This document shows, one piece after another, positions 1 to 63,818 of a stretch of 64,000 nt of DNA. Numbering within the stretch: position 1 is the first letter of the stretch; every line of letters begins with the position of its first letter. This DNA is from Azolla caroliniana (lineage: Eukaryota; Plantae; Polypodiophyta). The translations under genes were made by a program, and so were the position numbers. Below the pieces are notes generated by a model, which saw nothing but the letters and a program-made list of their open reading frames with translations, made no database searches and was not told where the DNA came from. The stretch is from assembly GCA_043228905.1 (NCBI GenBank), contig JBHGNT010000058.1, positions 62,001 through 126,000 of the forward strand, read 5' to 3'.

Positions 1-648
1 CAAGACCTAAACTAGGTGTTACAATAAAGTACAATTAACAAAATAACGTTTGAAGGATTGATGATGAACTTTACTTTGATTTTTTTCTCCTAACATCAAT
101 TTGTAAACTTAATCCCATTATTCGATTAATTCTAGAGATTTCAAATGAAATTGGACCAAACATTACGTTGTTCGGGACAACAAGAAGCAGTATATTTAGT
201 TGTGGTTATTACTCAACATTGTTACGATAAATTAGTACACCAATAATTATAGGTTGGATAACTTGATACAATTTCGAACAATACATATCCATTGCAAAAT
301 AATGGTCAACTGTCGAATAATGGTGAATTCTCGATGAGGATTGCACCATGTTTCTTTATTTGAAGTAAAGCACTAGAATATTATATTAGCTAATTCATTG
401 TAGTCTAGTTGGTTCAGATCCATGATGTTTACACGAGACTCCCGGGTACAGCAATTGGCATGGGAAAAACTAGATACATCATAGATCATGAGTTAATATC
501 GCATCGATGGAAACCGTTGAAATTATTAAATATTAAAAACGAGAGTGTCTTAGAGTAATCCTGTGTTTCTCATTGATACTTACGGATTATATAAATATTA
601 TTTATTACTAATCAATTATTGCAATCTTGAAAAGTACACAAGGTATGA

Positions 649-721
649 TCCATTGTAGTCTAGTTGGTTAGGATACTAGGCTCTCACATGAGATAGCCGG
701 GTTCAACTCCCAACAATGGAA
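649..721 (+). pseudogene. tRNA-Glu(CTC) pseudogene (representative degenerate copy)
   Basis: 73-nt match to the consensus with broken anticodon and T stems. Confidence 0.85.
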
Positions 722-1209
722 ACGACAATATCATATATTAAATTTCCGACGCATATGATGTTTTAATTGTTTGATAACTCAAAAACTCAAGATTATGTTT
801 GAAGGATTGATGACGATCTTTCCTCCATCAACATTCCAAAAATACGCATAGATTGTCGAATAATGGTGAATTCTCGATTAGAATTGCACCATGTTTCTTT
901 ATTTGAACGAAAGCACTTGAATATTACAATAACCAATTCTTTTACTAAATGAATTCCATTGTAGTCTAGTTCGTTCAGATCCTTGTTTTTTACACAAGAC
1001 TCCCGGGTACAACAATAGGCATTGGAAAAACTAGATACATCATAGATGATGAGGTATTGTCGCATCGATAAAAACCGTTGAAATTATTAAATCTTAAAAA
1101 CGAGAGTTTGTTAGAATAATCCTCAGTTTCTCGTTGATGCTTGCGCAATATATAAATATTATTTATTACTAATCTATGATTGCAATATTAAAAACTACAC
1201 AAGATATGA

Positions 1210-1287
1210 TCCATTGTAGTCTAGTTGATTAGGATACTCGGCTCTCACCCGAGAGACCTGGGCCGGGTTCAACTCCCGGCAATGGAA
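1210..1287 (+). pseudogene. tRNA-Glu(CTC) pseudogene with 5-bp insertion at the variable loop/T stem
   Basis: Consensus plus an extra CTGGG; the D-loop GG is changed to GA. Confidence 0.85.
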
Positions 1288-1773
1288 ACGACAATATCAT
1301 ATATTGAATTTCCGATGGATATCATGTGTTAACTATTTGATAACCCAAAAAATGAAGACCTAAACTAGACAATTAACAAAATAATCAATATTATGTTTGA
1401 AGGATTTGATGACGAACATTAGTTTGATTTTTCTCTCCTAACATCAATTTCTAAACTTAATCCCATTATTCGATTCATGGTAGAGGTTTCAAATGAAATT
1501 GGACAAAACATTATGTTGTTCGAGACAACAAGAAGAAGTATATTTGGTTGTGGTTATTCGTCAACATTGGTACGACAAATTAGTACACCAACAATTACAG
1601 TTGGGATAACTCGATACAATTTCACACAATACGCATAGAATACAAAATAATGTTCAACTGTCGACAAGCATTGCACCATGTTTCTTTATTTGTAGCAAAG
1701 CACTAGAATAGTACATTAACTAATTCATTTACTCAATGTATTCCATTGTAATCAAGTTGCTTCGAATCGTTGA

Positions 1774-4265
1774 TTTTTTTTTTTTCCAAAAAAAAAAACT
1801 ACTACCATTAGTTAAGCAATGTACAAAGGATAATTTACAACTCATATCTTATAAGACATCTTGCATGTCGAAGGAAAAGAATATGTGTAGATGAAACAAC
1901 AAAGAAAAAAAACTCCAAAGCACCACATCATTCGATGTGTATAGCATAACTCGAACACATATTCTCCACGTGAGCCTGATACAAGCAGAAGTCAGAATAG
2001 ATGTCCTCCATTCGCTCCTCAAGGCAGCACCCATCTAGATGTTAGGTACACTTGGAGGGAACAACCATCGTGGTGGTTGATAATTCCACTTCACTTTACC
2101 ATCCATTAGATGTAGCATCGACGAACTCCATTTCAGCAAGAAACGAGCTCTCGCTTCTTCACTTGCGTCAGATGGCCCTTGAAGACTTTCAAACTCACCT
2201 CGCAACATAGAAATAAGATTGAACCAGATCATCATTAGATTCTCTGCCGGCGGGGTTCGTTTACCTGTGAAGGTCTCCTTGCACCTAGATACCCACACTT
2301 GCCAGACCGTAAGGCCGACCACTAATACCTATATGTCCACGCAACGTTCCTGTAAGAAGAATAAACCTCCTTGCGTTAGTTGCACAGATCCTTGTATCAC
2401 CTTTAAAGAAGGATTGTTTCCATTCCACCCTTGAAACCACGAGGCCGATTCAATGGCCAACCAAGTGATTGCTGCGCTCGATACATGAACCTCAACCCCG
2501 AACCGAGCCAAGTTTCTTAACCTCCTCAACCAATTTTCTTGCGCTCGAGGGCAGCACTACAAACAATGAGCGATGTCCTCCAAGCTTGCACTACAGGCCT
2601 TCCAACCACTCATGCCACCTCTATTCCCAAGCCACTCTCCCGTTGGAACAACCCGATGGGTGATTAACCAAAAAAACACTTTGATCCGCTCGGGAAGGGA
2701 TGAGTTCCATATCCTGCTCCTAGTTCTATCCACGAAGGCTAACTTGATAGCTGCATAGGACCACTTGTTGGCACACTTCTCACGATACGAACCTAACTTT
2801 CTCCCCAACCGCGTCGAGTATTCGAAGAAACCTAATGATTTATCTTGTTCTCCCTTCCACGTATATTCAACGGGATCCCATTCTACGAGCTCGAGAGGCT
2901 TGGCTTCAACCACGTACAAGATCCAATCCTCCTCAACCTCTTCGACTGGTGGATTCACCTTCCATTTCTTTCCGACTCTTGCCACAATTCTAATCGGGTA
3001 CCAGCCTGCACTTTCATCTAATAATCCAATCTGGACGGTCTTCCCATTCTTTCCTAGACCCCTGACATTGATAATTTTTCCGGTATCATCACATTGTCCG
3101 GACCATTCACCCTCTTCCTCATTACCAATAGGAAGCGAGGAGAGAGCTGTATTGACTACGTCAAGCATCTTTCTGCCATTTCGGACCTTTCCCAAGTCTT
3201 CATATAGTTGATCACGATTATTGTCGGACAGCCGCATCCAATAAGCCACCAACTGTATCCCTAGACAATACAATGTAGCCCACGGTATGTGCTTGCTTTG
3301 TCCAAGCATCGTTCCTTCTGGCGATTGTACGATCTCGTTCCACAGTAGGGGTTGGCGCATCCATTTAACACTCGTACTTGGACGATTCTGACTTAGATGC
3401 CCACGGAGCATACTCCACGCCTGCATCCTTGACATACAAGTACGATCAGCCAACCGGTTAGATTTCCTCAACTTTAAGGCCATACAAAAAGGCCACACTT
3501 TGTGTGACTTCCAATGCCCACCCAGTCTTGGACTCCCGACAATGCTCCTATTATGTATCAATGTTTTCCATAACTCATTACCAGGTAGCAAGCTCCTTAC
3601 CAATACCTTACATAACAATGCTTGACTCTGCAATCAAGGGTCAACCAATCCTAAACCCCCCTTACTCTTGGGAAGAACCAACGTAGACCATGATACTTTG
3701 GCTGCCGCGTTGTCTTTCCTCATCCCAGCCCAAAGGAATCCCCTAATACACGCTTTAACATTACGAATAGCTTTCTTGTCAAACATCCACACTGAAACTG
3801 CATGCCATAATGTAGACAAGAACACATGGTTAGCTACTATGATCCTGCCAGCCAATGATAAGTTCATCCCTGACCAGTTGCAAATTTTGTCACAGATTTT
3901 GCTTTGAATTTGTTGCAACTGAATTCCTTTGTCGATATCTACCCCAATCCACGTTCCCAGATACCGAGTGGCTTCCCCGTTTGCAATCCATTTGAATTCA
4001 GCATTTGGCTTCCAAACAGGCTCGGACTCCAAGATGATCGAAAAACCCTTGGACTTCTTCCAATTGATGGACGCTACCAATACCTTGCAAAAGAGCTCAA
4101 TAACACTCTGTGCGCTCTCAAGATTCGCTTCATTTTCTTGGAGGTATAGCATCGTATCGTCCGGGAACTCCGACTCCAGCAGGGACTTCCTTGAATTAGG
4201 GATCGAAAAACCATGAAGATTTGCCCCTTGACTGTTAAAAAGGGCAGACATTGCTTCAGTAATAA
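1774..4265 (-). mobile_element. 5'-truncated non-LTR retrotransposon (L1/Tx1-like LINE)
   Basis: Poly(A) tail seen as T12 at 1774-1785 on +, and a ~250-bp 3' UTR. The ORF2 remnant has RT C-terminal motifs (EFPDDT for F/YADD, INWKKS, RYLG, LSLAGR, KVSWSTLVLPKSKGGLGL). The satellite is split precisely: ...aatcgttgattttt | actcgaaatgtgcggg... Confidence 0.93.
2035..4265 (-). pseudogene. LINE ORF2 C-terminal half (RT 3' part and zf-RVT-like domain), disrupted
   Basis: ORF pieces 3634..4314, 2557..3633, 2329..2529 and 2035..2322. IKVFFWLITHRVVPTGEWL...KAC...EDIAHCL resembles zf-RVT. There are in-frame stops near 3634 and 2557. Confidence 0.88.
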
Positions 4266-5773
4266 ACTCGAAATGTGCGGGTACAAGTACAGGCATAGGA
4301 AAAACTAGATACATTATATGTCATGAGTTAATGTGGCATCGATAAAAACCCGTGAAATTATTAAATCTTAAAAATGTGAGTGTGTTAGAATAATCCTCTA
4401 TTTCTTGTTGATGCTTGCGCAATATATAAATATAATTTATTACTAATCAATTATTGCAATATTAAAGCGTGTACAAGATGTGATCTATTGAAGTCTATTT
4501 GGTTAGAATACTCGGTTCCTTGCTTTTTACCTGAGACGCCCGGGTACAACTAGATATATCAGATATCATGAGTTATTCAATCTTAAACGAGGTTTTTGAT
4601 GAAATTTTACAAAACATTATGTTGTTCGTGACAAAAAGAAGCAGTATATTTACTTGGGGCTATTCCTCAACATCGTTACGACAATTTAGTACACCAATAA
4701 TTATAGTTTCGATAAGTTGATACAATTTCGAAAAATACGCATACATTGTCAAATAATGGTGTACTCTCGATGAGCAATGCACCATGTTTCTTTATTTGAA
4801 GCAAAGAACTAGAATATTACATTAACAAATTCATTTACTAAATGAATTCCATTGTAGTCTAGTTGGTTCACATCCTTGTTTTTTACACGAGACTCCCGGG
4901 TAGAACAATTGGCATTGGAAAAACTAGATACATCATAGATCATGAGTTAATATCGCATCGAAAAAAACACTTGAAATTATTAAATCTTAAAAACGAGAGT
5001 GTGTTAGAATAATCATCAGTTTCTAGTTGATGTTTGCGCACTATATAAATATTATTTATTACTAATCAATCATTGCAATATTAGAAAGTACACAAGATAT
5101 GATCCATTGTAGTCTAGTCGGTCGACACAGATCTTATGTTAACTGTTTGATAACTCAAAAACTGAAGGCCTAAAGTAGATGTTATAATAATGTACAATTA
5201 ACAAAATAATCAATATTATGTTTGAAGGATTGATGACGAGCTTTACTTTAATTTTTTTCTCCTAACATCAATTTCTAAACTTCATCCCATTATTCAATTA
5301 ATAGTAGAGGTTTCAAATGAAATTTGACAAAACATTATGTTGTTCGTGACAAGAAGAAGCAGTATATTTAGTCGTGGTTATTTTTCAACATGGTTACGAC
5401 AAATTAGTACACAGACAATTATTGTTTGGATAACTGGATAGAATTTCCAAAAATATGCATAGATTGTAGAAGAATGATGAACTCTCGATCAACATTGGAC
5501 CATATTTTTTTATTTGAAACAAAGCACTAGAATATTACATTAACTAATTCATTGACTTATGAATTCCATTGTAGTCTGGTTGGCATTGGCAAAACTAAAC
5601 ACATCCTAGATCATGAGGTAATGTCGCATCGATAAAAACCCTTGAAATTATTAAATCTTAAAAACGAGACTGTGTTAGAATAATCCTTAGTTTTTCGTTG
5701 ATGCTTGCGCAAAATATAAATATTATTTATTTCTAATTAATGATTGCAATATTAAAAAGCACACAATATGTGA

Positions 5774-5846
5774 TCCATTGTAGTCTAGTTGGTTAGGATA
5801 CTCCGGTCTCACCCGAGAGACCCGGATTCAACTCCCGGCAATGGAA
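5774..5846 (+). pseudogene. tRNA-Glu(CTC) pseudogene
   Basis: Acceptor stem intact; B box G53>A and an anticodon-stem mismatch. Confidence 0.85.
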
Positions 5847-8692
5847 ACGACAATGTCATATATTAAATTTCCGACGCATATCATCTGTTAACTGTTTGAT
5901 AACTGAAAAAATCAAGACCTAAATTTCCGACTCCCGGATACAACAAAAGGCATTGGAAAAACAAGATACATCATAGATCATTAGGTAATGTTGCATCGAT
6001 AAAAACCCTTGAAATTATTTAATCTTAAAAACGAGAGTGTGTTAGAATAATCCTCAGTTGCTCGTTGATACTTGCGCCATATATAAATATTATTTATTAC
6101 TAATGTAAATAATGTACAATTAACAAAATAATCATTATTATGTTTGAAGGATTGATGATGAACTTTGCTTTCATTTTTTTCTCCTAACATCAATTTCTCC
6201 TAAACTTAATCCAATTATTTAATTAATAGTAGAGGTTTTAAATGAAATTTGACAAAAGATTATGTTGTTCGGGACCAGAAGAAGCAGTATATTTACTCGT
6301 GGTTATTTCTCAACATGGTTACGACAAATTAGTACACCGACAATTATAGTTTGGATAACTTGATAGAATTTCCAAAAATACGAATAGTTTGTAGAATAAT
6401 GGTGAACTCTCGAACAACATTGTAGCATATTTCTTTATTTGAAGCAAAGCACTAGAATATTACATTAACTAATTCATTTACTAAATGAATTCCATTGTAG
6501 TCTAGTTGGTTCGGATCCTTGTTTTTCACACGAGACTCCCGGGTATAACAATTAGCGGTAGATTTGTTTGTGGTTAGTCATCAACATTGTTACGATAAAT
6601 TAGGACACCAACAATTATAGTTTGGATAACTTGATACAATTTCAATCAATACGCATAGATTGCAAAATAATGGTCAACTATCTACAAGCATTGCACCATG
6701 TTTCTTTCTTTGTAGCACAACACTAGAATAGTACATTAAGTAGTTCATTTACTCAATAATGGTCAACCCGTGAAATGATTAAATCTTAAAAACGAGAGTG
6801 TGTTAGTATAATCCTCTGTTTCTCATTAATGGCTGCGCAATATATAAATATTATTTATTTCTAAGCAATGATTGAAAAAGAACACTAACTGTGATCCATT
6901 GTAGTCTAGTTGCTTAGGATACTCGGCTCTCATCGGAGAGACCCGTGTTCAATTCCCAGCAACGGAAACGACAATATCGTATATTAAATTTTCTACGCAT
7001 ATCATGTGTTAACTGTTTGATAACTCAAAAACTCAAGACCTAAAGTCGGTGTTACAATAATGTATAATTAACAAAATAATCAATATTATGTTTGAAGGAC
7101 TGATAAAGAACTTTACTTTGATTTTTTCCTCCTAATATCAATTTCTAAACTTAATCCCATTATTCGATTAATGGTAGAGGTTTCGAATGAAACTAGACCA
7201 AACATTAGGTTGTTCGGGACAACAGGAAGCAGTATATTTAGTTATGGTTATTCCTCAACATTGTTACGATAAATTAGTAGACCAACAATTATAGTTTGGA
7301 TAACTTGATACAATTTCAAGCAATACGCATAGATTGCAAAATAATGGTCAACGCTTGACAAGTTTTGCACCAGGTTTCTTTATTTGTAGCAAAGCACTAA
7401 AATAGTACATTAACTAATTTATTTACTAAATGAATTCCATTGTAATCCAGTTGTCTCAAATTGTAGATTTTTACTCGAAACGTGCGGGGACAAGTACAGG
7501 CATAGGAAAAACTAGATAGATTATATATCATGAGTTAATGTGGCATCGATAAAAACCCGTGAAATTATTAAATCTTAAAAACGAGAGTTTGTTAGAATAA
7601 TCCTCTGTTTCTTGTTGATGCTTGTGCAATATATAAATATTATTTATTACTGATCAATGATTGCAATATTAAAAACTGTACAAGATGTAATCCATTAAAG
7701 TCTAGTTGGTCAGAATACTTGGCTCTCACGCGAGGTACCCGTGTTGAACTCTTGGCAATAGAAAGGATAACTCAAAAACATAAGACGTAAAGTAGTTACA
7801 ATAATGTACAATTACCAAAATAATCATTATTATGTTGGAAGGATTGATAAAGAACTTTGCTTTGAGTTTTTTCTCCGCACATCAATTTCTAAACTTAATA
7901 CGAATATTCTATTAATAGTAGAGGTTTCTAATGAGCTTTGACAAAAGATTATGTGGTTTGGGACAAGGAGAAGAAGTATATTTAGTTGTGGTTATTCCTT
8001 AACATTGTTACGACAAAGTAGTACACCAAGAATTATAGTTTGGATAATTTGATACAATTTCCAAAAATACGCATAGATTGTCGAATAATGGTGAATTCTC
8101 GATGACCATTGCACCATGTTTCTTGATTTGAAGTAAAGTACTAAAATATTAGATTACCTAATTCATTTACTAAAAGAATTCCAGTGTAGTCTAGTTGGTT
8201 CGTATCCTTGTTTTTTACACGAGACTCCCGGGTACAACAATTGGCATTGGAAAAACTAGCTACATCATAGATCATGAGTTAATATCACATCAATAAAAAC
8301 CATTCAAATTATTAAATCCTAAAAACGAGAGTTTGTTAGAATAGTGCTCAGTTTCTCGGTGACGCTTGCGCAACATATAAATATTATTTATTACGAATGA
8401 ATGATTACAATATTAAAAAGTACACAAGATATGATACATTATAGTCTAGTTGGTTAGGATACTCGGCTCTCACCCGAGAGACCCGGTTTCAACTCCCGGC
8501 AATGGAAACGAAAATAATATATATTAAATTTCCGACGCATATGTTTTTTTAACTGTTTGATAACTGAAAAACTCAAGACCTAAAGTAGATGTTATAATAA
8601 TGTACAATTAACGAAATAATCAATATTATGTGTGAAGGATTGAGGACGAACTTTGCTTTGATATTTTTCTCCTAACATCAATTTCTAAACTT

Positions 8693-11563
8693 TGCGTATG
8701 TTTTAGTAGTACATGACAGTAGAATGAAATTGCACAGGTAACATCAAACTGAAGAATAGAATATAACGTTAATCTAAATTGATGAAAGTTTTGTATTATA
8801 TACCTGTGTCAGAAAACTAATCTAAAACCCATTGAAAATTTGAAACAATAAAATTTGAAAAAATAAAAAATCTTGGATTTTTAATTGGAATCCAATGCGA
8901 TGCACTAGATTTCAGTTGAAAATCACAGTTTTTTTTTTTTTGTAATTTTTAAAATTTTTTCCATTAAAAAATAAAAAATGGATTTTCAACTAAAATACTA
9001 TGCACTACATTATATTTTAGTATATATAGCTAGAATCTAATGCAATGCGTTGGATTAGAGTCGAAAATCCATTTTTCTTTTTTCTTTTTCCAATGTTATT
9101 TATTTATTTATTTTCCATATAAAATAATAATAAACGGCTTTTCAACTGAAATCCGATACACTACATCAGATCTTAGTCTATACAGCTAGACATTGATGCA
9201 TTGCATTAGATTTTAGCTGGCAATCGTCTTTTTTTTCAATTGTTTTTTATTTTTTCAAAAAATAAATAAAAATATATTAGAAAAGTGGATTTCCAACTGA
9301 AATCTAATGCACTACATCGAATTTCAATTAAAAATCCAAATTTCTTTTAGGTTTTTCATAAAACAATGGGATAATAAAAAAATATTACATTTTCAACAAA
9401 ATCTGAACCATTGAGTCGGATTTCAATTGCAAATTAATGTTTTATGAAAAAACATAAGAAAAATATTGGACTTGCAATGGAAATTTGATGCACTGCATCG
9501 GATTTCTGTTGAAACTCAATGATTTTGAACGGAAATCCGATGCAGTGCATCGGATTTCCATTGAAAATCCTGTTGAAAATGATCTGTTTTCAACGGGAAT
9601 CCGATGCAGTGCCTCGGATTCCCGTTGAAAACACATCATTTTAAATGGAGAAAATCACAATCTGTTTATTTTTAACACTTTTTTAGAGAAAAATATAAAC
9701 AAATAAGAAAATTTGTAAACAAACAAGAAAACGTGGACTTTCAATGGAAATCCGATGCAGTGCATCGGATTCCCGTTGAAAATCCATTTTTTTCAATTCC
9801 TATATATTTATTTATGATAAAAACAAAAACAATTCAAAACAAATACAAAAAGAAAGTCAAAATATCTGAAAAATTGGAAACAAATAAGACAAAATGGATT
9901 TTCAATAGAAATCCGATGTAGTGCATCGGATTTCTCTAGAAAACCCATTTTTTGCAATTTTTATTTATTTATTTATGGGAAAAAATGAAAAAAAATTTAA
10001 AAAATACAAAACAATATTTTAAAATATGAAAATTTGGTAACAAATAGCAAAAAATTGACTTTCAATACAAATCCGATGCAATGAATCGGATTTCCTTTGA
10101 AAATTCATTTTTTCAATTTCTATATAGTTATTTATGAGAAAATAGACAAACAAAATACCAAAAAAATTCTAAAAACTATGAAAATTTGGAAATTTTCCAT
10201 TGAAAATCAATTTTTTCAATATTTATTTATTTTTTATAGAAAAAATTCAAAAAAAAAGCAAATTTGGGAAAAAATATGTAAAAGTGGACTTTCAACCAAA
10301 ATCCGATGTAGTGCATCGGATTTCCGTTGAAAATCCATTTTTTCAATTTTTATTTATTTTTTTATGGGAAAAATAAAAACAAATTCAAAAAAAATTCAAA
10401 AAATAAGAAAATTTTCAAAAAAATAACAAAAATTGGATTTTCAATTGAATCCGATGCACGGAATTGGATTTCCATTGAAATCTAAAATTTCAATTTTTAT
10501 TTATTTATTTATGAGTAAAATAAAAAATGTTTGTTTATTTATTTATGGGAAAATGTTTTATTTTTTCAATTTGTATTTATTTATGTATTTTCGGGAAATC
10601 CATGCAATGTATCATATTTTAGTCTATGTAGCTAGAATTCAATGCAATGCATTAAAATGCAAGAGTATTTTTTTAATGGAAATTTTTAAAAAAATTCCAA
10701 GACTTACAGGAATCTGATGCATTATATCCAATTCTAGATGTATAGAGTAAAATTCGACATGTTGCGTCAAATCTAGATGGAATGAATCGGATTTCTGTAC
10801 GACATCAAAGGCTTACTATGAGAATCTAAGAAAAATGGAAAACATGTTTAAGACATTTTTTAGATTCTAATGATTTTGGTAGAAAGCTTCTCTCACATAA
10901 TCTAATCTTGTAAATGGAAAGTACATAATGAAATATCATAACGAAAAAGTGAGGAGGAAAGATGCATCAAGCACATCTACTCTTACATTGGATAATGTTT
11001 ATATATTAGTTTATGACTTATCTTTGACCAAAACAAGTTATCTATGACAGACCACAATGAAGATACAAAAAGAGGATCTGGAATGTGGCTTCAGACACAA
11101 CACAAAGACAAACAATAAGCATAACTCATAAACTCGATGAGGTTGGATTGCAATTGGATCAACACAATGCATTAGTTGCCATTGATGATGAGGATGAGAC
11201 CTCATAAACTCGTACTAGTTCATCTAATGGGTATGAAGATGATGACATAAACTTGAAAAATGATTGCCCTAATACGTTAACTATAAATATTGTATTGCAC
11301 ATCAAGATTTGGAATCAGAATTTCTATAAATATTGGGGTTAGTCATTTTGGACATTCATTTGTAAGTTTGGCATGTCCATTATTTAGGCATTGTTTTGAA
11401 CACCTAAAATTCCGTACATGCTAAAAATCAATATATTTTTGGGTCATTTTTAAAATTCCTTTACGCATGCGGCACACCTTTTTGTGAATCACCCTAATTT
11501 GTGTCATTTTTTTATGGACAGTTCTCAAAATGCGACATATTACCTGTTTCAAATGTCCCGGTG
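8693..11563. mobile_element. 2.9-kb non-satellite insert: foldback-like palindromic array plus possible DNA-transposon remnant
   Basis: Satellite homology is lost abruptly at 8692/8693 and returns at 11564. The insert has internal palindromic repeats and no intact ORF. Confidence 0.55.
8875..10800. repeat. Array of ~15 imperfect ~50-bp palindromes (GGATTTTCAAnGGAAATCCGATGCA-G/C-TGCATCGGATTTCCnTTGAAAATCC) with A/T-run linkers
   Basis: Clear copies near 9287, 9468, 9520, 9586, 9735, 9896, 10057, 10286 and 10435, with decayed copies on both sides. Confidence 0.9.
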
Positions 11564-13710: not shown

Positions 13711-13783
13711 TCCATTGTAGTCTAGTTGGTTAGGATACTCGGCTCTCACCCGAGAGTTCCGGGTTCAACTACCGGCAATGGAA
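13711..13783 (+). pseudogene. tRNA-Glu(CTC), near-intact but C61>A in the B box/T stem
   Basis: Three differences from consensus; acceptor, D and anticodon stems are intact. Confidence 0.8.
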
Positions 13784-26678: not shown

Positions 26679-26751
26679 TTTATTGTAGTCTAGTTGGTTA
26701 GGATACTCGGCTTTCACCTGAGAGATCCGGGTTCAACTCCTGGCAATGGAA
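26679..26751 (+). tRNA. tRNA-Glu(TTC) candidate; best-folding copy seen, may still be a pseudogene
   Basis: A box and B box (GGTTCAACTCC) are intact. All deviations from consensus are C>T, and those in stems leave G.U pairs (acceptor TTTATTG/CAATGGA, anticodon CTCGG/CTGAG, T stem CCGGG/CCTGG). A TTTT run lies ~22 nt downstream. Confidence 0.45.
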
Positions 26752-32607: not shown

Positions 32608-32668
32608 AGTAGAGGGAAAAGGGTATGAGGATGAGGGAGAACGACAAGTAGGCTGGAGGAAAGAAAAT

Positions 32669-51400: not shown

Positions 51401-51960
51401 CCATTGTAGTCTAGTTGGTTAGGATACTAGGCTCTCACATGAGATAGCCGGGTTCAACTCCCAACAATGGAAACGACAATATCATATATTAAATTTTTGA
51501 CTCATATGATGTTTTAATTGTTTGATAACTCAAAAACGCAAGATTATGTTTGAAGGATTGATGACGATCTTTCCTCCATCAACATTCCAAAAATACGCAT
51601 AGCTTGTCGAATAATGATTAATTCTCGATTAGCATTGCACCATGTTTGTTTATTTGAATGAAAGCACTTGAATATTACATTAACCAATTCATTTACTAGT
51701 TGAATTCCATTGTAGTCTAGTTCGTTCAGATCCTTGTTTTTTACACAAGACTCCCGGGTACAACAATAGGCATTGGAAAAACTAGATACATCATAGATGA
51801 TGAGGGAATGTCGCATCGATAAAAACCGTTGAAATTATTAAATCTTAAAAATGAGAGTGTGTTAGAATAATCCTCAGTTTCTCGTTGATGCTTGCGCAAT
51901 ATATAAATATTATTTATTACTAATCTATGATTGCAATATTAAAAACTACACAAGATATGA

Positions 51961-52033
51961 TCCATTGTAGTCTAGTTGGTTAGGATACTCGGCTCTCACC
52001 CGAGAGACCCGGTTTCGACTCTCGGCAATGGAA
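51961..52033 (+). pseudogene. tRNA-Glu(CTC), near-intact but G53>T
   Basis: The first 52 nt match consensus; the B box reads GTTTCGACTCT. Confidence 0.8.
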
Positions 52034-55000: not shown

Positions 55001-56901
55001 TCGGCTCTCACCCAAGAGACTCGGGTTTAATTCCCAGAAATGGAAATGACAATATCATATATTAAACTTCCGACGCATATCATGTGTTAATTGTTTGATA
55101 ACTTAGAAACTCAAGACCTAAACTAGGTGTTACAATAATGTACAATTAACAAAATAACGTTTGAAGGATTGATGATGAACTTTACTTTGATTTTTTTCTC
55201 CTAACATCAATTTGTAAACTTAATCCCATTATTCGATTAATTCTAGAGATTTCAAATGAAATTGGACCAAACATTACGTTGTTCGGGACAACAAGAAGCA
55301 GTATATTTAGTTGTGGTTATTACTCAACATTGTTACGATAAATTAGTACACCAATAATTATAGGTTGGATAACTTGATACAATTTCGAACAATACATATA
55401 CATTGCAAAATAATGGTCAACTGTCGAATAATGGTGAATTCTCGATGAGGATTGCACCATGTTTCTTTATTTGAAGTAAAGCACTAGAATATTATATTAG
55501 CTAATTCATTTACTAAATGAATTCCATTGTAGTCTAGTTGGTTCAGATCCATGATGTTTACACGAGACTCCCGGGTACAGCAATTGGCATGGGAAAAACT
55601 AGATACAACATAGATCATGAGTTAATATTGCATCGATGGAAACCGTTGAAATTATTAAATATTAAAAACGAGAGTGTCTTAGAGTAATCCTGTGTTTCTC
55701 ATTGATACTTACGGATTATATAAATATTATTTATTACTAATCAATGATTGCAATCTTGAAAAGTACACAAGGTATGATCCATTGTAGTCTAGTTGGTTAG
55801 GATACTAGGCTCTCACATGAGATAGCCGGGTTCAACTCCCAACAATGGAAACGACAATATCATATATTAAATTTCCGACGCATATGATGTTTTAATTGTT
55901 TGATAACTCAAAAACTCAAGATTATGTTTGAAGGATTGATGACGATCTTTCCTCCATCAACATTCCAAAAATACGCATAGATTGTCGAATAATGGTGAAT
56001 TCTCGATTAGAATTGCACCATGTTTCTTTATTTGAACGAAAGCACTTGAATATTACAATAACCAATTCTTTTACTAAATGAATTCCATTGTAGTCTAGTT
56101 CGTTCAGATCCTTGTTTTTTACACAAGACTCCCGGGTACAACAATAGGCATTGGAAAAACTAGATACATCATAGATGATGAGGTATTGTCGCATCGATAA
56201 AAACTGTTGAAATTATTAAATCTTAAAAACGAGAGTTTGTTAGAATAATCCTCAGTTTCTCGTTGATGCTTGCGCAATATATAAATATTATTTATTACTA
56301 ATCTATGATTGCAATATTAAAAACTACACAAGATATGATCCATTGTAGTCTAGTTGATTAGGATACTCGGCTCTCACCCGAGAGACCTGGGCCGGGTTCA
56401 ACTCCCGGCAATGGAAACGACAATATCATATATTGAATTTCCGATGGATATCATGTGTTAACTATTTGATAACTCAAAAAATAAAGACCTAAACTAGACA
56501 ATTAACAAAATAATCAATATTATGTTTGAAGGATTGATGGCGAACTTTACTTTAATTTTTTTCTCCTAACATCAATTTCTAAACTTAATCCCATTATTCG
56601 ATTAATGGTAGAGCTTTCAAATGAAATTGGACAAAACATTATGTTGTTCGAGACAACAAGAAGAAGTATATTTGGTTGTGGTTATTCGTCAACATTGGTA
56701 CGACAAATTAGTACACCAACAATTACAGTTGGGATAACTCGATACAATTTCACACAATACGCATAGAATACAAAATAATGTTCAACTGTCGACAAGCATT
56801 GCACCATGTTTCTTTATTTGTAGCAAAGCACTAGAATAGTACATTAACTAATTCATTTACTCAATGTATTCCATTGTAATCAAGTTGCTTCGAATCGCTG
56901 A

Positions 56902-59391
56902 TTTTTTTTTTTCCAAAAAAAAAAACTACTACCATTAGTTATGCAATGTACAAAGGATAATTTACAACTCATATCTTATAAGACATCTTGCATGTCGAAG
57001 GAAAAGAATATGTGTAGATGAAACAACAAAGAAAAAAAACTCCAAAGCACCACATCATTCGATGTGTATAGCATAACTCGAACACATATTCTCCACGTGA
57101 GCCTGATACAAGCAGAAGTTAGAATAGATGTCCTCCATTCGCTCCTCAAGGCAGCACCCATCTAGATGTTAGGTACACTTGGAGGGAACAACCATCGTGG
57201 TGGTTGATAATTCCACTTCACTTTACCATCCATTAGATGTAGCATCGACGAACTCCATTTCAGCAAGAAACGAGCTCTCGCTTCTTCACTTGCGTCAGAT
57301 GGCCCTTGAAGACTTTCAAACTCACCTCGCAACATAGAAATAAGATTGAACCAGATCATCATTAGATTCTCTGCCGGCGGGGTTCGTTTACCTGTGAAGG
57401 TCTCCTTGCACCTAGATACCCACACTTGCCAGACCGTAAGGCCGACCACTAATACCTATATGTCCACGCAACGTTCCTGTAAGAAGAATAAACCTCCTTG
57501 CGTTAGTTGCACAGATCCTTGTATCACCTTTAAAGAAGGATTGTTTCCATTCCACCCTTGAAACCACGAGGCCGATTCAATGGCCAACCAAGTGATTGCT
57601 GCGCTCGATACATGAACCTCAACCCCGAACCGAGCCAAGTTTCTTAACCTCCTCAACCAATTTTCTTGCGCTCGAGGGCAACACTACAAACAATGAGCGA
57701 TGTCCTCCAAGCTTGCACTACATGCCTTCCAACCACTCATGCCACCTCTATTCCCAAGCCACTCTCCCGTTGGAACAACCCGATGGGTGATTAACCAAAA
57801 AAACACTTTGATCCGCTCGGGAAGGGATGAGTTCCATATCCTGCTCCTAGTTCTATCCACGAAGGCTAACTTGATAGCTGCATAGGACCACTTGTTGGCA
57901 CACTTCTCACGATACGAACCTAACTTTCTCCCCAACCGCGTCGAGTATTCGAAGAAACCTAATGATTTATCTTGTTCTCCCTTCCACGTATATTCAACGG
58001 GATCCCATTCTACGAGCTCGAGAGGCTTGGCTTCAACCACGTACAAGATCCAATCCTCCTCAACCTCTTCGACTGGTGGATTCACCTTCCATTTCTTTCC
58101 GACTCTTGCCACAATTCTAATCGGGTACCAGCCTGCACTTTCATCTAATAATCCAATCTGGACGGTCTTCCCATTCTTTCCTAGACCCCTGACATTGATA
58201 ATTTTTCCGGTATCATCACATTGTCCGGACCATTCACCCTCTTCCTCATTACCAATAGGAAGCGAGGAGAGAGCTGTATTGACTACGTCAAGCATCTTTC
58301 TGCCATTTCGGACCTTTCCCAAGTCTTCATATAGTTGATCACGATTATTGTCGGACAGCCGCATCCAATAAGCCACCAACTGTATCCCTAGACAATACAA
58401 TGTAGCCCACGGTATGTGCTTGCTTTGTCCAAGCATCGTTCCTTCTGGCGATTGTACGATCTCGTTCCACAGTAGGGGTTGGCGCATCCATTTAACACTC
58501 GTACTTGGACGATTCTGACTTAGATGCCCACGGAGCATACTCCACGCCTGCATCCCTGACATACAAGTACGATCAGCCAACCGGTTAGATTTCCTCAACT
58601 TTAAGGCCATACAAAAAGGCCACACTTTGTGTGACTTCCAATGCCCACCCAGTCTTGGACTCCCGACAATGCTCCTATTATGTATCAATGTTTTCCATAA
58701 CTCGTTACCAGGTAGCAAGCTCCTTACCAATACCTTACATAACAATGCTTGACTCTGCAATCAAGGGTCAACCAATCCTAAACCCCCCTTACTCTTGGGA
58801 AGAACCAACGTAGACCATGATACTTTGGCTGCCGCGTTGTCTTTCCTCATCCCAGCCCAAAGGAATCCCCTAATACACGCTTTAACATTACGAATAGCTT
58901 TCTTGTCAAACATCCACACTGAAACTGCATGCCATAATGTAGACAAGAACACATGGTTAGCTACTATGATCCTGCCAGCCAATGATAAGTTCATCCCTGA
59001 CCAGTTGCAAATTTTGTCACAGATTTTGCTTTGAATTTGTTGCAACTGAATTCCTTTGTCGATATCTACCCCAATCCACGTTCCCAGATACCGAGTGGCT
59101 TCCCCGTTTGCAATCCATTTGAATTCAACATTTGGCTTCCAAACAGGCTCGGACTCCAAGATGATCGAAAAACCCTTGGACTTCTTCCAATTGATGGACG
59201 CTACCAATACCTTGCAAAAGAGCTCAATAACACTCTGTGCGCTCTCAAGATTCGCTTCATTTTCTTGGAGGTATAGCATCGTATCGTCCGGGAACTCCGA
59301 CTCCAGCAGGGACTTCCTTGAATTAGGGATCGAAAAACCATGAAGATTTGCCCCTTGACTGTTAAAAAGGCAGACATTGCTTCAGTAATAA
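56902..59391 (-). mobile_element. Duplicate of the 5'-truncated LINE
   Basis: Same 5' and 3' junctions and the same premature stops as 1774-4265, with only about 8-10 differences seen. Confidence 0.93.
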
Positions 59392-62300
59392 ACTCGAAAC
59401 GTGCGGGTACAAGTACAGGCATAGGAAAAACTAGATACATTATATGTCATGAGTTAATGTGGCATCGATAAAAACCCGTGAAATTATTAAATCTTAAAAA
59501 TGTGAGTGTGTTAGAATAATCCTCTATTTCTTGTTGATGCTTGCGCAATATATAAATATAATTTATTACTAATCAATTATTGCAATATTAAAGCGTGTAC
59601 AAGATGTGATCTATTGAAGTCTATTTGGTTAGAATACTCGGTTCCTTGCTTTTTACCTGAGACGCCCGGGTACAACTAGATATATCAGATATCATGAGTT
59701 ATTCAATCTTAAACGAGGTTTTTGATGAAATTTTACAAAACATTATGTTGTTCGTGACAAAAAGAAGCAGTATATTTACTTGGGGCTATTCCTCAACATC
59801 GTTACGACAAATTAGTACACCAATAATTATAGTTTCGATAAGTTGATACAATTTCGAAAAATACGCATACATTGTCAAATAATGGTGTACTCTCGATGAG
59901 CAATGCACCATGTTTCTTTATTTGAAGCAAAGAACTAGAATATTACATTAACAAATTCATTTACTAAATGAATTCCATTGTAGTCTAGTTGGTTCACATC
60001 CTTGTTTTTTACATGAGACTCCCGGGTAGAACAATTGGCATTGGAAAAACTAGATACATCATAGATCATGAGTTAATATCGCATCGAAAAAAACACTTGA
60101 AATTATTAAATCTTAAAAACGAGAGTGTGTTAGAATAATCATCAGTTTCTAGTTGATGTTTGCGCACTATATAAATATTATTTATTACTAATCAATCATT
60201 GCAATATTAGAAAGTACACAAGATATGATCCATTGTAGTCTAGTCGGTCGACACAGATCTTATGTTAACTGTTTGATAACTCAAAAACTGAAGGCCTAAA
60301 GTAGATGCTATAATAATGTACAATTAACAAAATAATCAATATTATGTTTGAAGGATTGATGACGAGCTTTACTTTAATTTTTTTCTCCTAACATCAATTT
60401 CTAAACTTCATCCCATTATTCAATTAATAGTAGAGGTTTCAAATGAAATTTGACAAAACATTATGTTGTTCGTGACAAGAAGAAGCAGTATATTTAGTCG
60501 TGGTTATTATTCAACATGGTTACGACAAATTAGTACACAGACAATTATTGTTTGGATAACTGGATAGAATTTCCAAAAATATGCATAGATTGTAGAAGAA
60601 TGATGAACTCTCGATCAACATTGGACCATATTTTTTTATTTGAAACAAAGCACTAGAATATTACATTAACTAATTCATTGACTTATGAATTCCATTGTAG
60701 TCTGGTTGGCATTGGCAAAACTAAACACATCCTAGATCATGAGGTAATGTCGCATCGATAAAAACCCTTGAAATTATTAAATCTTAAAAACGAGAGTGTG
60801 TTAGAATAATCCTTAGTTTTTCGTTGATGCTTGCGCAAAATATAAATATTATTTATTTCTAATCAATGATTGCAATATTAAAAAGCACACAATATGTGAT
60901 CCATTGTAGTCTAGTTGGTTAGGATACTCCGGTCTCACCCGAGAGACCCGGATTCAACTCCCGGCAATGGAAACGACAATGTCATATATTAAATTTCCGA
61001 CGCATATCATCTGTTAACTGTTTGATAACTGAAAAACTCAAGACCTAAATTTCCGACTCCCGGATACAACAAAAGGCATTGGAAAAACAAGATACATCAT
61101 AGATCATTAGGTAATGTTGCATCGATAAAAACCCTTGAAATTATTTAATCTTAAAAACGAGAGTGTGTTAGAATAATCCTCAGTTGCTCGTTGATACTTG
61201 CGCCATATATAAATATTATTTATTACTAATGTAAATAATGTACAATTAACAAAATAATCATTATTATGTTTGAAGGATTGATGATGAACTTTCCTTTCAT
61301 TTTTTTCTCCTAACATCAATTTCTCCTCAACTTAATCCAATTATTTAATTAATAGTAGAGGTTTTAAATGAAATTTGACAAAAGATTATGTTGTTCGGGA
61401 CCAGAAGAAGCAGTATATTTACTCGTGGTTATTTCTCAACATGGTTACGACAAATTAGTACACCGACAATTATAGTTTGGATAACTTGATAGAATTTCCA
61501 AAAATACGAATAGTTTGTAGAATAATGGTGAACTCTCGAACAACATTGTAGCATATTTCTTTATTTGAAGCAAAGCACTAGAATATTACATTAACTAATT
61601 CATTTACTAAATGAATTCCATTGTAGTCTAGTTGGTTCGGATCCTTGTTTTTCACACGAGACTCCCGGGTATAACAATTAGCGGTAGATTTGTTTGTGGT
61701 TAGTCATCAACATTGTTACGATAAATTAGGACACCAACAATTATAGTTTGGATAACTTGATACAATTTCAATCAATACGCATAGATTGCAAAATAATGGT
61801 CAACTATCTACAAGCATTGCACCATGTTTCTTTCTTTGTAGCACAACACTAGAATAGTACATTAAGTAGTTCATTTACTCAATAATGGTCAACCCGTGAA
61901 ATGATTAAATCTTAAAAACGAGAGTGTGTTAGTATAATCCTCTGTTTCTCATTAATGCCTGCGCAATATATAAATATTATTTATTTCTAAGCAATGATTG
62001 AAAAAGAACACTAACTGTGATCCATTGTAGTCTAGTTGCTTAGGATACTCGGCTCTCATCGGAGAGACCCGTGTTCAATTCCCAGCAACGGAAACGACAA
62101 TATCGTATATTAAATTTTCTACGCATATCATGTGTTAACTGTTTGATAACTCAAAAACTCAAGACCTAAAGTCGGTGTTACAATAATGTATAATTAACAA
62201 AATAATCAATATTATGTTTGAAGGACTGATAAAGAACTTTACTTTGATTTTTTCCTCCTAATATCAATTTCTAAACTTAATCCCATTATTCAATTAATGG

Positions 62301-63818
62301 TAGAGGTTTCGAATGAAACTAGACCAAACATTAGGTTGTTCGGGACAACAGGAAGCAGTATATTTAGTTATGGTTATTCCTCAACATTGTTACGATAAAT
62401 TAGTAGACCAACAATTATAGTTTGGATAACTTGATACAATTTCAAGCAATACGCATAGATTGCAAAATAATGGTCAACGCTTGACAAGTTTTGCACCAGG
62501 TTTCTTTATTTGTAGCAAAGCACTAAAATAGTACATTAACTAATTTATTTACTAAATGAATTCCATTGTAATCCAGTTGTCTCAAATTGTAGATTTTTAC
62601 TCGAAACGTGCGGGGACAAGTACAGGCATAGGAAAAACTAGATAGATTATATATCATGAGTTAATGTGGCATCGATAAAAACGCGTGAAATTATTAAATC
62701 TTAAAAACGAGAGTTTGTTAGAATAATCCTCTGTTTCTTGTTGATGCTTGTGCAATATATAAATATTATTTATTACTGATCAATGATTGCAATATTAAAA
62801 ACTGTACAAGATGTAATCCATTAAAGTCTAGTTGGTCAGAATACTTGGCTCTCACGCGAGGTACCCGTGTTGAACTCTTGGCAATAGAAAGGATAACTCA
62901 AAAACTTAAGACGTAAAGTAGTTACAATAATGTACAATTACCAAAATAATCATTATTATGTTGGAAGGATTGATAAAGAACTTTGGTTTGAGTTTTTTCT
63001 CCGCACATCAATTTCTAAACTTAATACGAATATTCTATTAATAGTAGAGGTTTCTAATGAGCTTTGACAAAAGATTATGTGGTTTGGGACAAGGAGAAGA
63101 AGTATATTTAGTCGTGGTTATTCCTTAACATTGTTACGACAAAGTAGTACACCAAGAATTATAGTTTGGATAATTTGATACAATTTCCAAAAATACGCAT
63201 AGATTGTCGAATAATGGTGAATTCTCGATGACCATTGCACCATGTTTCTTGATTTGAAGTAAAGTACTAAAATATTAGATTACCTAATTCATTTACTAAA
63301 AGAATTCCAGTGTAGTCTAGTTGGTTCGTATCCTTGTTTTTTACACGAGACTCCCGGGTACAACAATTGGCATTGGAAAAACTAGCTACATCATAGATCA
63401 TGAGTTAATATCACATCAATAAAAACCATTCAAATTATTAAATCCTAAAAACGAGAGTTTGTTAGAATAGTGCTCAGTTTCTCGGTGACGCTTGCGCAAC
63501 ATATAAATATTATTTATTACGAATGAATGATTGCAATATTAAAAAGTACACAAGATATGATACATTATAGTCTAGTTGGTTATGATACTCGGCTCTCACC
63601 CGAGAGACCCGGTTTCAACTCCCGGCAATGGAAACGAAAATAATACATTTTAAATTTCCGACGCATATGTTTTGTTAACTGTTTGATAATTGAAAAACTC
63701 AAGACCTAAAGTAGATGTTATAATAATGTACAATTAACGAAATAATCAATATTATGTGTGAAGGATTGAGGACGAACTTTGCTTTGATATTTTTCTCCTA
63801 ACATCAATTTTTCAACTT

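What the first reader, a model, noticed from the sequence alone, without database searches (positions are those of the whole stretch)
1..63818. Large tandem satellite built from a tRNA-Glu gene
Seen: about 65-70 co-oriented tRNA-Glu copies with shared flanks, extending beyond the window start. Nearly all carry lesions, yet the 5' half with the A box is often preserved, as is an upstream TATTAAAA...CAA context. Known: plant tRNA genes use an upstream TA-rich motif and CAA, and tandem tRNA arrays exist (Arabidopsis Ser-Tyr-Tyr and Pro clusters, Entamoeba tRNA-STR arrays). Inference: a tRNA gene array has turned into a heterochromatic satellite. It could act as a (peri)centromeric or subtelomeric repeat, a TFIIIC/Pol III-binding barrier, or a source of tRNA-like small RNAs.
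Basis: partly seen in the sequence, partly recalled or inferred. Interest (0 to 1): 0.8.

Follow-up and report, generated by a model that had tools for sequence, protein, structure and literature searches.

The report
Decayed tandem array of tRNA-Glu genes
About 50 kb of this window is a head-to-tail array of a 774-base unit built around a plant-type nuclear tRNA-Glu gene; the copies are now mutating like junk DNA, so it is a large tRNA pseudogene array rather than a working gene cluster or a demonstrably functional satellite.

Summary
All tRNA-like copies lie on the + strand: ARAGORN, Rfam 47, and a unit profile finds 77 tRNA-derived segments, 66 of them near full length. The repeat unit is 774 bp. 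It holds a truncated older tRNA-Glu pseudogene (psi), a spacer with TATA-like and CAA motifs, a tRNA-Glu(CUC) gene, and a 465-bp spacer. The consensus tRNA is a perfect cloverleaf of the plant nuclear type, but no individual copy equals it.

- **No constraint on the tRNA part.** It changes at 0.93 times the base-matched spacer rate. Stem changes are not compensated: one double-sided change, and pairing no better than in shuffles.
- **Promoter elements.** The B box survives in 13 of 60 copies and the A box in 39 of 60. No copy combines both boxes, CAA, a terminator and an intact cloverleaf.
- **Old, unhomogenised array.** Units are about 84% identical whatever their distance apart. Growth was by multi-unit block duplications, the youngest at least 8.9 kb, 55 kb apart, about 99.3% identical.
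- **Interruptions.** A LINE fragment, a Ty3/gypsy chromovirus and two other inserts break the array.

Verdict: a pseudogenised tRNA-Glu homocluster decaying neutrally. It is a new member of a known kind, of modest interest.

The parts
1..1778 (+). Array block 1. It starts at unit position 376, so the array runs past the window start.
   Evidence: nhmmer unit profile; self-BLAST coverage about 60x
1779..4265 (-). 5'-truncated LINE fragment (RVT_1 weak, zf-RVT). Its poly-T end on + abuts the T run of a psi copy. The array resumes in phase at unit position 36.
   Evidence: Pfam; junction sequences; unit coordinates
4266..8692 (+). Array block 2
8693..11563 (.). Non-array insert replacing unit positions about 545-716. 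It contains about 16 palindromic hairpin motifs spaced about 150 bp apart. Its nature is unknown.
11564..17905 (+). Array block 3
12416..13207 (+). Representative complete unit (profile positions 1-774): psi-tRNA at 12416-12475, tRNA-Glu(CTC) copy at 12670-12742.
   Evidence: Rfam 45.6 bits
17906..19205 (.). 1.3-kb non-array insert, a TE fragment or possible solo LTR, with an AACCGG-type microsatellite. It is flanked by partial psi copies and its right boundary is ambiguous.
19206..27989 (+). Array block 4
26679..26751 (+). The only copy with 21/21 stem pairs and all 9 checked invariant bases. Its anticodon has mutated to TTC, the acceptor stem has two G-U pairs, and the upstream CAA is missing.
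   Evidence: (53.5 bits)
27990..33105 (-). Degenerate Ty3/gypsy chromovirus (gag, RT, RNase H, integrase, chromodomain, all in broken frames). The LTRs are about 421 bp with 12 differences. A 5-bp target duplication (CTAGT) shows it inserted into a psi copy.
   Evidence: Pfam; LTRs
33106..56907 (+). Array block 5, the longest uninterrupted stretch (23.8 kb)
33349..33421 (+). Best-scoring tRNA copy (Rfam 61.3 bits). It keeps 21/21 pairs, but the anticodon is TTC and the invariant C56 is changed to T.
55112..64000 (+). Second copy of segment 1-8875 (49 substitutions and 5 indels). It includes the LINE (56908-59391), array block 6 (59392-63818) and the start of the hairpin insert (63819-64000).

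Best explanation
This is a pseudogenised homocluster of a plant-type nuclear tRNA-Glu(CUC) gene.

Origin (inferred): a segment of about 0.77 kb carried one intact tRNA-Glu gene, with its TATA-like and CAA upstream context. About 237 bp upstream sat an already damaged tRNA-Glu copy (psi). Unequal crossing-over amplified this segment head to tail.

Later history:
- Nothing constrained the copies afterwards. They accumulated substitutions at the spacer rate, without compensation in the stems, and faster at CG sites (shown).
- The array kept changing through duplication of multi-unit blocks, through deletions, and through rearrangements that join psi and tRNA sequence (shown from junction types and block paralogy).
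- It was invaded by a LINE, a chromovirus and other inserts (shown).

Its most likely present state is silent, methylated repeat DNA with no tRNA-supplying role (inferred). A minority of copies still carry A and B boxes and could bind the Pol III machinery.
For: - **Unit anatomy.** The 774-bp consensus has psi at 1-60, the tRNA at 237-309, and only 25 nt shared between them.
- **Founder gene.** The consensus tRNA is a perfect cloverleaf of plant tRNA-Glu(CUC) type.
- **No sequence constraint.** Divergence from consensus is 10.9% in the tRNA against 9.9% overall. Parsimony events per column, matched for base, are 0.93x in the tRNA.
- **No structural constraint.** 83.5% of stem cells pair, against 84.2% in shuffles; there is one double-sided change among 987 cells.
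- **No complete gene.** A box 39/60, B box 13/60, T4 within +30 in 22/60, and 0/60 with everything; anticodons have drifted (CTC 40, TTC 8, others 12).
- **No homogenisation.** Mean pairwise unit identity is 84% and flat with distance. Nearest relatives lie in blocks 1.6, 4.2, 8.9, 12-14, 48-51 and 55 kb away.
- **Insertion into an existing array.** The array stays in phase across the insert for both TEs, and the gypsy element also has a target-site duplication. A paralogous block at 51.2-54.3 kb lacks the LINE.
- **Deamination signature.** CG transitions are 15-20% against about 7% at CHH.
- **Independent sample.** A metagenome contig (L010) carries the same repeat at 96.3% identity.
Against: - The D arm/A box is the slowest-changing part of the tRNA. 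It shows 24 events against about 39 expected; my own rough Poisson estimate, not a tool result, puts this near p = 0.01 as a pre-stated hypothesis (event counts). The A box survives three times as often as the B box. Weak selection or gene conversion on that segment is therefore not excluded.
- CpG observed/expected is 0.92, so long-term heavy methylation is not proven.
- Expression, chromatin state, chromosomal position and genome-wide copy number are unknown.
- The taxon rests on the tRNA sequence and a zf-RVT LINE. The nearest named relatives of the chromovirus are fungal.
Confidence: 0.8

Rival explanations
1. The array is a functional chromosomal satellite. It would serve as a (peri)centromeric or subtelomeric repeat, as a TFIIIC/Pol III-bound barrier, or as a source of tRNA-like small RNAs.
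For: - The array is long, co-oriented and extends beyond the window.
- The A-box/D-arm segment changes more slowly than the rest of the tRNA.
- The 5' 16-20 nt are present as 33-45 exact copies. 5' tRNA-Glu small RNAs of this type are seen in plants.
- A chromodomain retrotransposon has inserted, which is typical of heterochromatin.
Against: - The tRNA part as a whole evolves like spacer.
- Stem changes are not compensated.
- The B box is intact in 22% of copies only.
- Monomers are not homogenised, unlike typical centromeric satellites.
- Spacer windows are as conserved as the A box.
- No data on position or occupancy are available.
Confidence: 0.1
2. The array is made of a mobile element with a tRNA-derived Pol III promoter. 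It would be a TRIMp3/Helenus-type miniature LTR retrotransposon arranged LTR-internal-LTR-internal, as in Cassandra arrays, or a SINE that became tandem.
For: - Helenus TRIMs with tRNA-like LTR sequences exist in plants, fungi and animals and can form tandem arrays (PMC10886601). Cassandra arrays are known in plants (PMC7215508, listed).
- The unit length of 774 bp lies within the TRIMp3 size range.
- The consensus has only TTT directly after the tRNA. The nearest longer T run is a T7 about 155 nt downstream, which would give a SINE-sized Pol III transcript.
Against: - No PBS complementary to tRNA-iMet occurs anywhere in the window, even allowing 2 mismatches.
- No convincing PBS or polypurine tract was seen by eye in the consensus.
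- The two tRNA-like segments share only 25 nt, so there are no LTR-like duplicated flanks.
- The consensus tRNA is a complete canonical cloverleaf, which Helenus copies generally are not.
- Units abut in phase, with no poly(A) tails or target duplications.
- The unit has no similarity to the LINE or the gypsy element in the window.
Confidence: 0.06
3. It is a working, or conditionally expressed, tRNA-Glu gene cluster, like the Arabidopsis Ser-Tyr-Tyr cluster that is silent in most tissues but reactivated in root tips.
For: - Plant tDNA clusters that are epigenetically silenced yet can be reactivated are documented (PMC7544208; PMC12308677, abstract).
- A few copies keep a full cloverleaf: 26679-26751, 33349-33421 and 1210-1287.
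- TTTT lies at +22 in 22/60 copies.
Against: - No copy combines A box, B box, CAA, a terminator and at least 20/21 stem pairs.
- The best copies have lesions: C56T, G19A plus a 5-nt insertion, or a mutated anticodon with two G-U pairs in the acceptor stem.
- There is no purifying selection.
Confidence: 0.03
4. It is an assembly artefact, either wholly or in the 55-kb-spaced duplicate.
For: - The two end segments are about 99.3% identical and both run off the window.
- 0.55% substitutions is within the range of haplotype divergence in outcrossing plants (the range is my own knowledge).
Against: - Units differ by about 16% and carry individual lesions.
- The gypsy insertion has a target-site duplication, and the array continues in phase across both the gypsy and the LINE.
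- An independent metagenome contig carries the repeat.
- The duplicates differ by 49 substitutions with balanced transitions and transversions, and by only 5 indels.
- At most, only the duplicate could be an artefact.
Confidence: 0.01

Closest known systems
Plant nuclear tRNA gene homoclusters and heteroclusters (Arabidopsis Pro, Ser-Tyr-Tyr and Cys; maize Ile and Ala; barley Gln)
   Same: - Head-to-tail repeats of a unit that carries a tRNA gene with its own flanks, all in one orientation.
- They arise by tandem or segmental duplication.
- In Arabidopsis the clustered genes are heterochromatic and largely silent (PMC7544208; PMC11700998; PMC13437025; PMC13578239).
   Different: - The isotype is Glu, which the surveys I read do not list among recurrent or lineage-specific clusters.
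- This array has more copies: 66 in 64 kb, against the 24-28 quoted for the largest clusters.
- Those clusters have uniform flanks and largely intact genes. Here the units are about 16% diverged and every copy is damaged.
- Each unit also carries a second, older pseudo-tRNA.
Satellite DNA and 5S rDNA-type tandem arrays in plant heterochromatin
   Same: - A long tandem array of a sub-kilobase unit.
- Transposon insertions within the array.
- Excess CG transitions.
- The unit carries a Pol III gene, as in 5S arrays (PMC13578239).
   Different: - No concerted evolution: 84% identity regardless of distance.
- Unit length is highly variable through deletions and rearrangements.
- Genome abundance and location are unknown.
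TRIMp3 elements (Helenus, Cassandra) and their tandem arrays
   Same: - A small-RNA-gene-derived Pol III promoter sits inside a repeat of a few hundred bp that can form LTR-internal tandem arrays (PMC10886601).
   Different: - No PBS, PPT or LTR structure was found.
- The tRNA part of the consensus is a complete, canonical tRNA.
Human 1q23.3 tRNA variable-number tandem repeat and Entamoeba tRNA arrays
   Same: - Tandem repeats whose unit carries tRNA genes. The human repeat is proposed as a boundary element (PMC4041453, abstract).
   Different: - The human unit is 7.3 kb, GC-rich, binds CTCF and carries intact genes. From my own knowledge, the Entamoeba array units carry several intact tRNA genes.
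- Here there is one isotype, and it is decayed.

Membership tests
Plant tRNA gene homocluster (tandem tDNA array) | Density of same-isotype tDNAs: at least 5 within 5 kb (PMC13437025), or at least 3 per kb (PMC11700998) | tested here: met
   The first criterion is met. Rfam hits at or above gathering score at 12670, 13711, 14400, 15173, 15597, 16355 and 17151 give 7 within 4.6 kb. Overall there are 66 near-full copies in 64 kb, about 1 per kb. The stricter 3-per-kb rule is generally not met, because the unit is 774 bp.
Plant tRNA gene homocluster (tandem tDNA array) | Copies share orientation and repeated flanking sequence (unit duplication, not chance aggregation) | tested here: met
   All copies are on +, within a 774-bp unit profile that aligns across the whole array.
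Plant tRNA gene homocluster (tandem tDNA array) | Members are predicted functional tRNA genes (intact cloverleaf, A and B boxes, terminator) | tested here: not met
   0/60 copies have all features, 3/60 keep 21/21 pairs, and the B box is intact in 13/60. Only the consensus is intact. tRNAscan-SE was not available; ARAGORN and Rfam were used instead.
Functional tRNA-Glu gene family under selection | Slower substitution in the gene than in its flanks, and compensatory changes in stems | tested here: not met
   The rate is 0.93x expectation, rank 84 of 326 windows. There is 1 double-sided change, and pairing is 83.5% against 84.2% in shuffles.
Satellite DNA | Long head-to-tail array of a defined monomer | tested here: met
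   About 49.6 kb of 774-bp units, roughly 64 unit equivalents, extending beyond the window.
Satellite DNA | Concerted evolution: monomers homogenised, neighbours more alike | tested here: not met
   Mean pairwise identity is 0.842. It ranges only from 0.837 to 0.847 across distance bins from under 1 kb to 60 kb.
Satellite DNA | High genome-wide copy number; heterochromatic, centromeric or subtelomeric location | not testable with these tools
   No genome context is available. One further copy block was found in a metagenome assembly (L010).
TRIMp3 / Helenus-type LTR retrotransposon array | Primer-binding site next to the LTR end, and a polypurine tract | tested here: not met
   The PBS-iMet motif has 0 matches at up to 2 mismatches. 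No convincing PBS or PPT was seen in the consensus by eye. PBS sites for other tRNAs were not scanned systematically.
TRIMp3 / Helenus-type LTR retrotransposon array | tRNA-like sequence embedded in a repeated LTR; dispersed copies with 4-5 bp target duplications | tested here: inconclusive
   Within the unit only 25 nt repeat. In an LTR-internal array one LTR per unit would be expected, so this does not decide the matter. Dispersal cannot be tested here.
tRNA-derived SINE | tRNA-related head plus body plus A- or T-rich tail, each copy flanked by target duplications and dispersed | tested here: not met
   Units abut in phase without tails or target duplications. There is no similarity to the LINE in the window.

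The most novel reading that the evidence does not exclude
The array keeps a chromatin-level role that does not need intact tRNAs. The slower-changing A-box/D-arm segment, and the psi copies at which three of the four interruptions begin, would mark sites still recognised by the Pol III machinery or kept nucleosome-free. The array would then act as a cluster of extra-TFIIIC-like sites, a preferred landing pad for retroelements, or a source of 5' tRNA-Glu-like small RNAs carrying the array-specific A4.
Probability: 0.08. Interest if true: 0.6.

Novelty: new member of a known kind. Interest (0 to 1): 0.3.

Why it matters
Tandem tRNA gene clusters are a known but poorly understood feature of plant genomes. 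The documented ones (Pro, Ser-Tyr-Tyr, Cys, Ile, Ala, Gln) consist largely of intact and fairly uniform genes. This array shows the other end of that life cycle: a larger Glu cluster that has lost every working copy, is not homogenised, and is being broken up by transposons.

It has two practical uses:
- It is a caution for tRNA gene counts, since 34-47 copies here would be called as tRNA genes.
- It is a natural neutral control for asking whether silent tDNA clusters are kept by selection.

It would become more interesting only if occupancy or small-RNA data showed activity.

Tried and rejected
- **TRF** did not report the main period, because its limit is 500 bp. I used self-BLAST and an iterated nhmmer profile instead.
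- **Species identification failed.**
  - The gag, LINE and a related pol protein gave mostly unnamed metagenome hits.
  - Contig look-ups gave only ENA assembly codes ERZ10343xx-44xx and JGI ids.
  - A cluster look-up gave no names, and a paper search for the ERZ codes found nothing.
  - The nearest named relatives of the chromovirus are fungal: Cetraspora 50% for gag, Cunninghamella 52% for pol. I still read the window as plant because the tRNA matches published plant tRNA-Glu(CUC) sequences through the anticodon arm and the LINE has a zf-RVT domain. This conflict is left open.
- **No RNase H domain** was found in the LINE tail.
- **Other RNA families.** A permissive Rfam search over about two units (window 11560-13300) found nothing but tRNA.
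- **Literature.** Searches for a described tRNA-Glu array or a tRNA-derived plant satellite found none. That is absence in the searched library only.
- **Gene conversion of psi 5' ends by the tRNA.** I considered this as the cause of the 'preserved 5' halves'. The two psi families differ along their whole length, so conversion is not needed and I did not adopt it.
- **The 1.3-kb insert as a clean solo LTR.** I first read it as one with a 4-bp duplication. Its right end also weakly resembles psi sequence, so the boundary is left ambiguous.
- **Not used.** The large representative protein search and structure prediction would not bear on a non-coding repeat.


Full report
**What is there.**
ARAGORN tRNAs in the window, 32 of them tRNA-Glu with anticodon CTC or TTC, all on the + strand. 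Rfam's tRNA model gives 47 hits at or above its gathering score, again all on +. A short-word BLAST with one copy finds about 130 plus-strand pieces, many of them only the first 17-26 nt.

Self-comparison shows that most of the window is a diverged direct repeat with no inverted copies. Preferred offsets are near 730-790 bp and their multiples. TRF missed this because its longest period is 500.

An iterated nhmmer profile converged on a 774-bp unit and tiles the array with 134 segments. The array covers 1-1778, 4266-8692, 11564-17905, 19206-27989, 33106-56907 and 59392-63818, about 49.6 kb or 77% of the window. The window begins at unit position 376, so the array continues upstream.

**Anatomy of the unit.**

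| Unit positions | Content |
|---|---|
| 1-60 | psi: a damaged tRNA-Glu copy whose anticodon loop is replaced by a T run and whose T arm is mutated; in the consensus it is cut short |
| 61-236 | AT-rich spacer ending in a TATTAAAA-like motif and a CAA a few bases before the gene |
| 237-309 | tRNA-Glu(CTC) |
| 310-774 | Spacer |

- Some units keep a fuller psi that still shows an acceptor-like 3' end.
- Only 25 nt at the 5' ends of psi and the tRNA are alike in the consensus.
- The psi copies fall into two families that differ along their whole length. One of them has a 5' 20 nt identical to the tRNA.

**The founder gene.**
The majority consensus of 48 gap-free copies (alignment A2) folds into a complete cloverleaf with all the invariant bases I checked. 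Three published sources tie it to plants:
- Its D arm, anticodon arm, variable region and T stem are the same as in a published Arabidopsis tRNA-Glu(CTC) 3' fragment (PMC3221849).
- The same parts match a barley tRNA-Glu (PMC1904245).
- Its first 20-21 nt match 5' small RNAs reported from poplar and strawberry, except at position 4, and at position 21 in the 21-nt strawberry RNA.

The change at position 4 is paired with a matching change at position 69, so the founder had an A-T pair where the published plant sequences have G-C. With a LINE carrying a zf-RVT domain, this points to a land plant.

There is one conflict. The nearest named relatives of the inserted chromovirus are fungal: Cetraspora gag at 50% and Cunninghamella pol at 52%. 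The closest relatives of all are unnamed contigs in ENA assemblies ERZ10343xx-44xx. I could not name the species.

**State of the copies.**
Of the 77 segments that overlap the tRNA columns, 66 are near full length, or 60 without the duplicated end segment.

| Feature (of 60 copies) | Count |
|---|---|
| Identical to consensus | 0 (median 7 mismatches) |
| All 21 stem pairs kept | 3 |
| A-box pattern | 39 |
| B-box pattern | 13 |
| Both boxes | 10 |
| TTTT within 30 nt downstream | 22 |
| TATTAAAA upstream | 30 |
| CAA within 14 nt upstream | 36 |
| All of the above with at least 20 pairs | 0 |

- Anticodons have drifted: CTC 40, TTC 8, twelve others.
- The best copies each have a lesion:
  - 33349-33421 has C56 changed to T.
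  - 1210-1287 has a changed G19 and a 5-nt insertion.
  - 26679-26751 has a mutated anticodon and two G-U pairs in the acceptor stem.

**Is the tRNA part constrained?**
- Divergence from consensus is 10.9% in the tRNA against 9.9% for the whole unit. At AT sites it is 5.1% against 6.5%, and at GC sites 16.0% against 17.6%.
- I counted parsimony events on a tree of 34 units and matched for base class. The tRNA runs at 0.93 of expectation, rank 84 of 326 windows of the same length.
- The D arm with the A box is the slowest part, at 0.56-0.62 of expectation. Spacer windows near unit 394 and 427 are just as slow.
- On the cloverleaf, 83.5% of stem cells pair against 84.2% in column shuffles. Only one cell in 987 has a change on both sides, and 492 of 500 shuffles pair at least as well.

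The copies therefore decay without regard to the structure. A weak effect on the A-box segment remains possible.

**How the array evolved.**
- Units are on average 84% identical, and this does not change with distance from under 1 kb to 60 kb.
- Nearest relatives lie in multi-unit blocks at offsets of about 1.6, 4.2, 8.9, 12-14, 48-51 and 55 kb, with identities from 90% to over 99%. Growth was by block duplication, not unit-by-unit homogenisation.
- Recurrent unit variants are inherited within block families. They include loss of unit positions 460-646, 309-619 and 257-334. In another variant the 61-236 spacer occurs twice around a hybrid copy that starts as tRNA and continues as psi (for example 13212-13939). 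A four-member family carries a 29-nt piece of unit 667-700 inside a psi/tRNA hybrid.
- Transitions at CG sites are 15-20% against about 7% at CHH sites and 2.5% at A/T sites. This fits cytosine methylation, though CpG observed/expected is still 0.92.
- As a rough inference only: about 16% raw divergence, with plant rates of 0.7-1.3e-8 per site per year (from my own knowledge), puts the main amplification on the order of 7-13 million years ago.

**Interruptions.**
- **LINE, 1779-4265 (minus strand).** A 5'-truncated LINE. Its poly-T end on the + strand merges with the T run of a psi copy, and the array resumes in phase.
- **Chromovirus, 27990-33105 (minus strand).** A Ty3/gypsy chromovirus with broken gag, RT, RNase H, integrase and chromodomain frames. 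Its 421-bp LTRs differ at 12 sites. A 5-bp target duplication shows it landed in a psi copy.
- **Insert 17906-19205.** A 1.3-kb insert with an AACCGG-type microsatellite, flanked by partial psi copies. Its right boundary is ambiguous.
- **Insert 8693-11563.** This replaces part of a unit and carries about 16 palindromic hairpins.

A paralogous block at 51.2-54.3 kb lacks the LINE, while the youngest duplicate contains it. The order is therefore older block duplication, then LINE insertion, then the youngest duplication.

**The end duplicate.**
Segments 1-8875 and 55112-64000 differ by 49 substitutions (24 transitions, 25 transversions) and 5 indels. That is too many for an exact assembly repeat, but it is within haplotype range, so a mis-joined haplotype cannot be excluded.

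**Independent occurrence.**
A scan of metagenome contigs with a 22-nt spacer motif found a 1.5-kb contig (L010, ENA assembly ERZ1034427). It is 96.3% identical to window 36070-37569 and built of the same unit pieces. Its tRNA copy resembles a different block family, so it is probably another paralogous block. The repeat is real, and more of it exists outside the window.

**Comparison with what is known.**
Plant surveys describe homoclusters and heteroclusters of tRNA genes. These are Pro, Ser-Tyr-Tyr and Cys in Arabidopsis, Ile and Ala in maize, and Gln in barley, with at most 24-28 repeats and uniform flanks. The Arabidopsis clusters sit in heterochromatin-like chromatin states and are largely silent. 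None of the papers I read lists a Glu cluster.

This window fits that kind by origin and layout. It fails the 'functional gene' feature and is much more decayed. It fits 'satellite' in layout only, because it lacks homogenisation.

The mobile-element alternative is a Helenus or Cassandra-like TRIM array (PMC10886601). It finds no support from a PBS scan or from the unit's structure. It cannot be fully excluded without the rest of the genome.

**Verdict.**
The origin from a tRNA-Glu gene array is right, and the functional proposals are unsupported. This is a new member of a known kind, of modest interest.

Nothing here is human, a toxin, or an animal or crop virus. The only consensus built was of the non-coding repeat unit.

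Noticed in passing
window 1-8875 and 55112-64000: A segment of at least 8.9 kb, including a LINE insertion, is present twice 55.1 kb apart at about 99.3% identity (49 substitutions, 5 indels). Both copies run off the window, so the true length is unknown. It is either a real recent segmental duplication or a haplotype mis-join.
   Followed up: partly
window 1-8875 vs 55112-64000: Between the two copies, the array part has 0.66% substitutions and the embedded LINE part 0.28% (42 in 6388 bp against 7 in 2487 bp). This may reflect ectopic conversion among array units.
   Followed up: no
window 1779, 27990 and 17906 (junctions): Three of the four interruptions begin inside the 60-bp psi segment, which is 7.8% of the unit. 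The LINE sits at its T run, the chromovirus at its A-box-like part (target duplication CTAGT), and the 1.3-kb insert near psi position 47. The third junction is ambiguous.
   Followed up: partly
window 8860-10500: There are about 16 copies of a 24-29 nt perfect or near-perfect palindrome (GGAAATCCGATGCAGTGCATCGGATTTCC type), spaced about 150 bp apart in very AT-rich sequence. TRF reports periods of 161 and 149. Its nature is unknown; it could be a MITE-like or Helitron-like remnant.
   Followed up: no
window 18235-18530: An AACCGG/AAACCGG-type microsatellite with 23-77 bp higher periods lies inside the 1.3-kb insert. Upstream there is a TATA-like TATATAAG. The region resembles the U3 of an LTR.
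   Followed up: no
window 27990-33105; loci L001-L009: The inserted chromovirus has its closest relatives (66-88% for gag) in unnamed ENA metagenome assemblies ERZ10343xx-44xx. Its nearest named relatives are fungal (Cetraspora, Cunninghamella), although the tRNA is of plant type. The element shows no TGG-type primer-binding site next to its 5' LTR.
   Followed up: partly
L010 (ENA ERZ1034427 NODE-10375), 1-1500: This metagenome contig is 96.3% identical to window 36070-37569. Differences are concentrated in the tRNA-derived pieces (7.1% against 2.8%). Its tRNA copy matches another block family, which suggests mosaic paralogy or conversion.
   Followed up: partly
window 17446-17547, 36781-36881, 45785-45855, 49302-49403: A four-member family of hybrid copies has a psi-type 5' part, a 29-nt piece that comes from unit positions 667-700, and then the 3' part of the tRNA. 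ARAGORN does not call them as tRNAs.
   Followed up: yes
window 793-1065, 51544-51816, 55922-56194 (minus strand): A 90-codon ORF recurs in the short unit variant that lacks unit positions 460-646. It is probably a chance open frame in AT-rich sequence. It was not searched.
   Followed up: no
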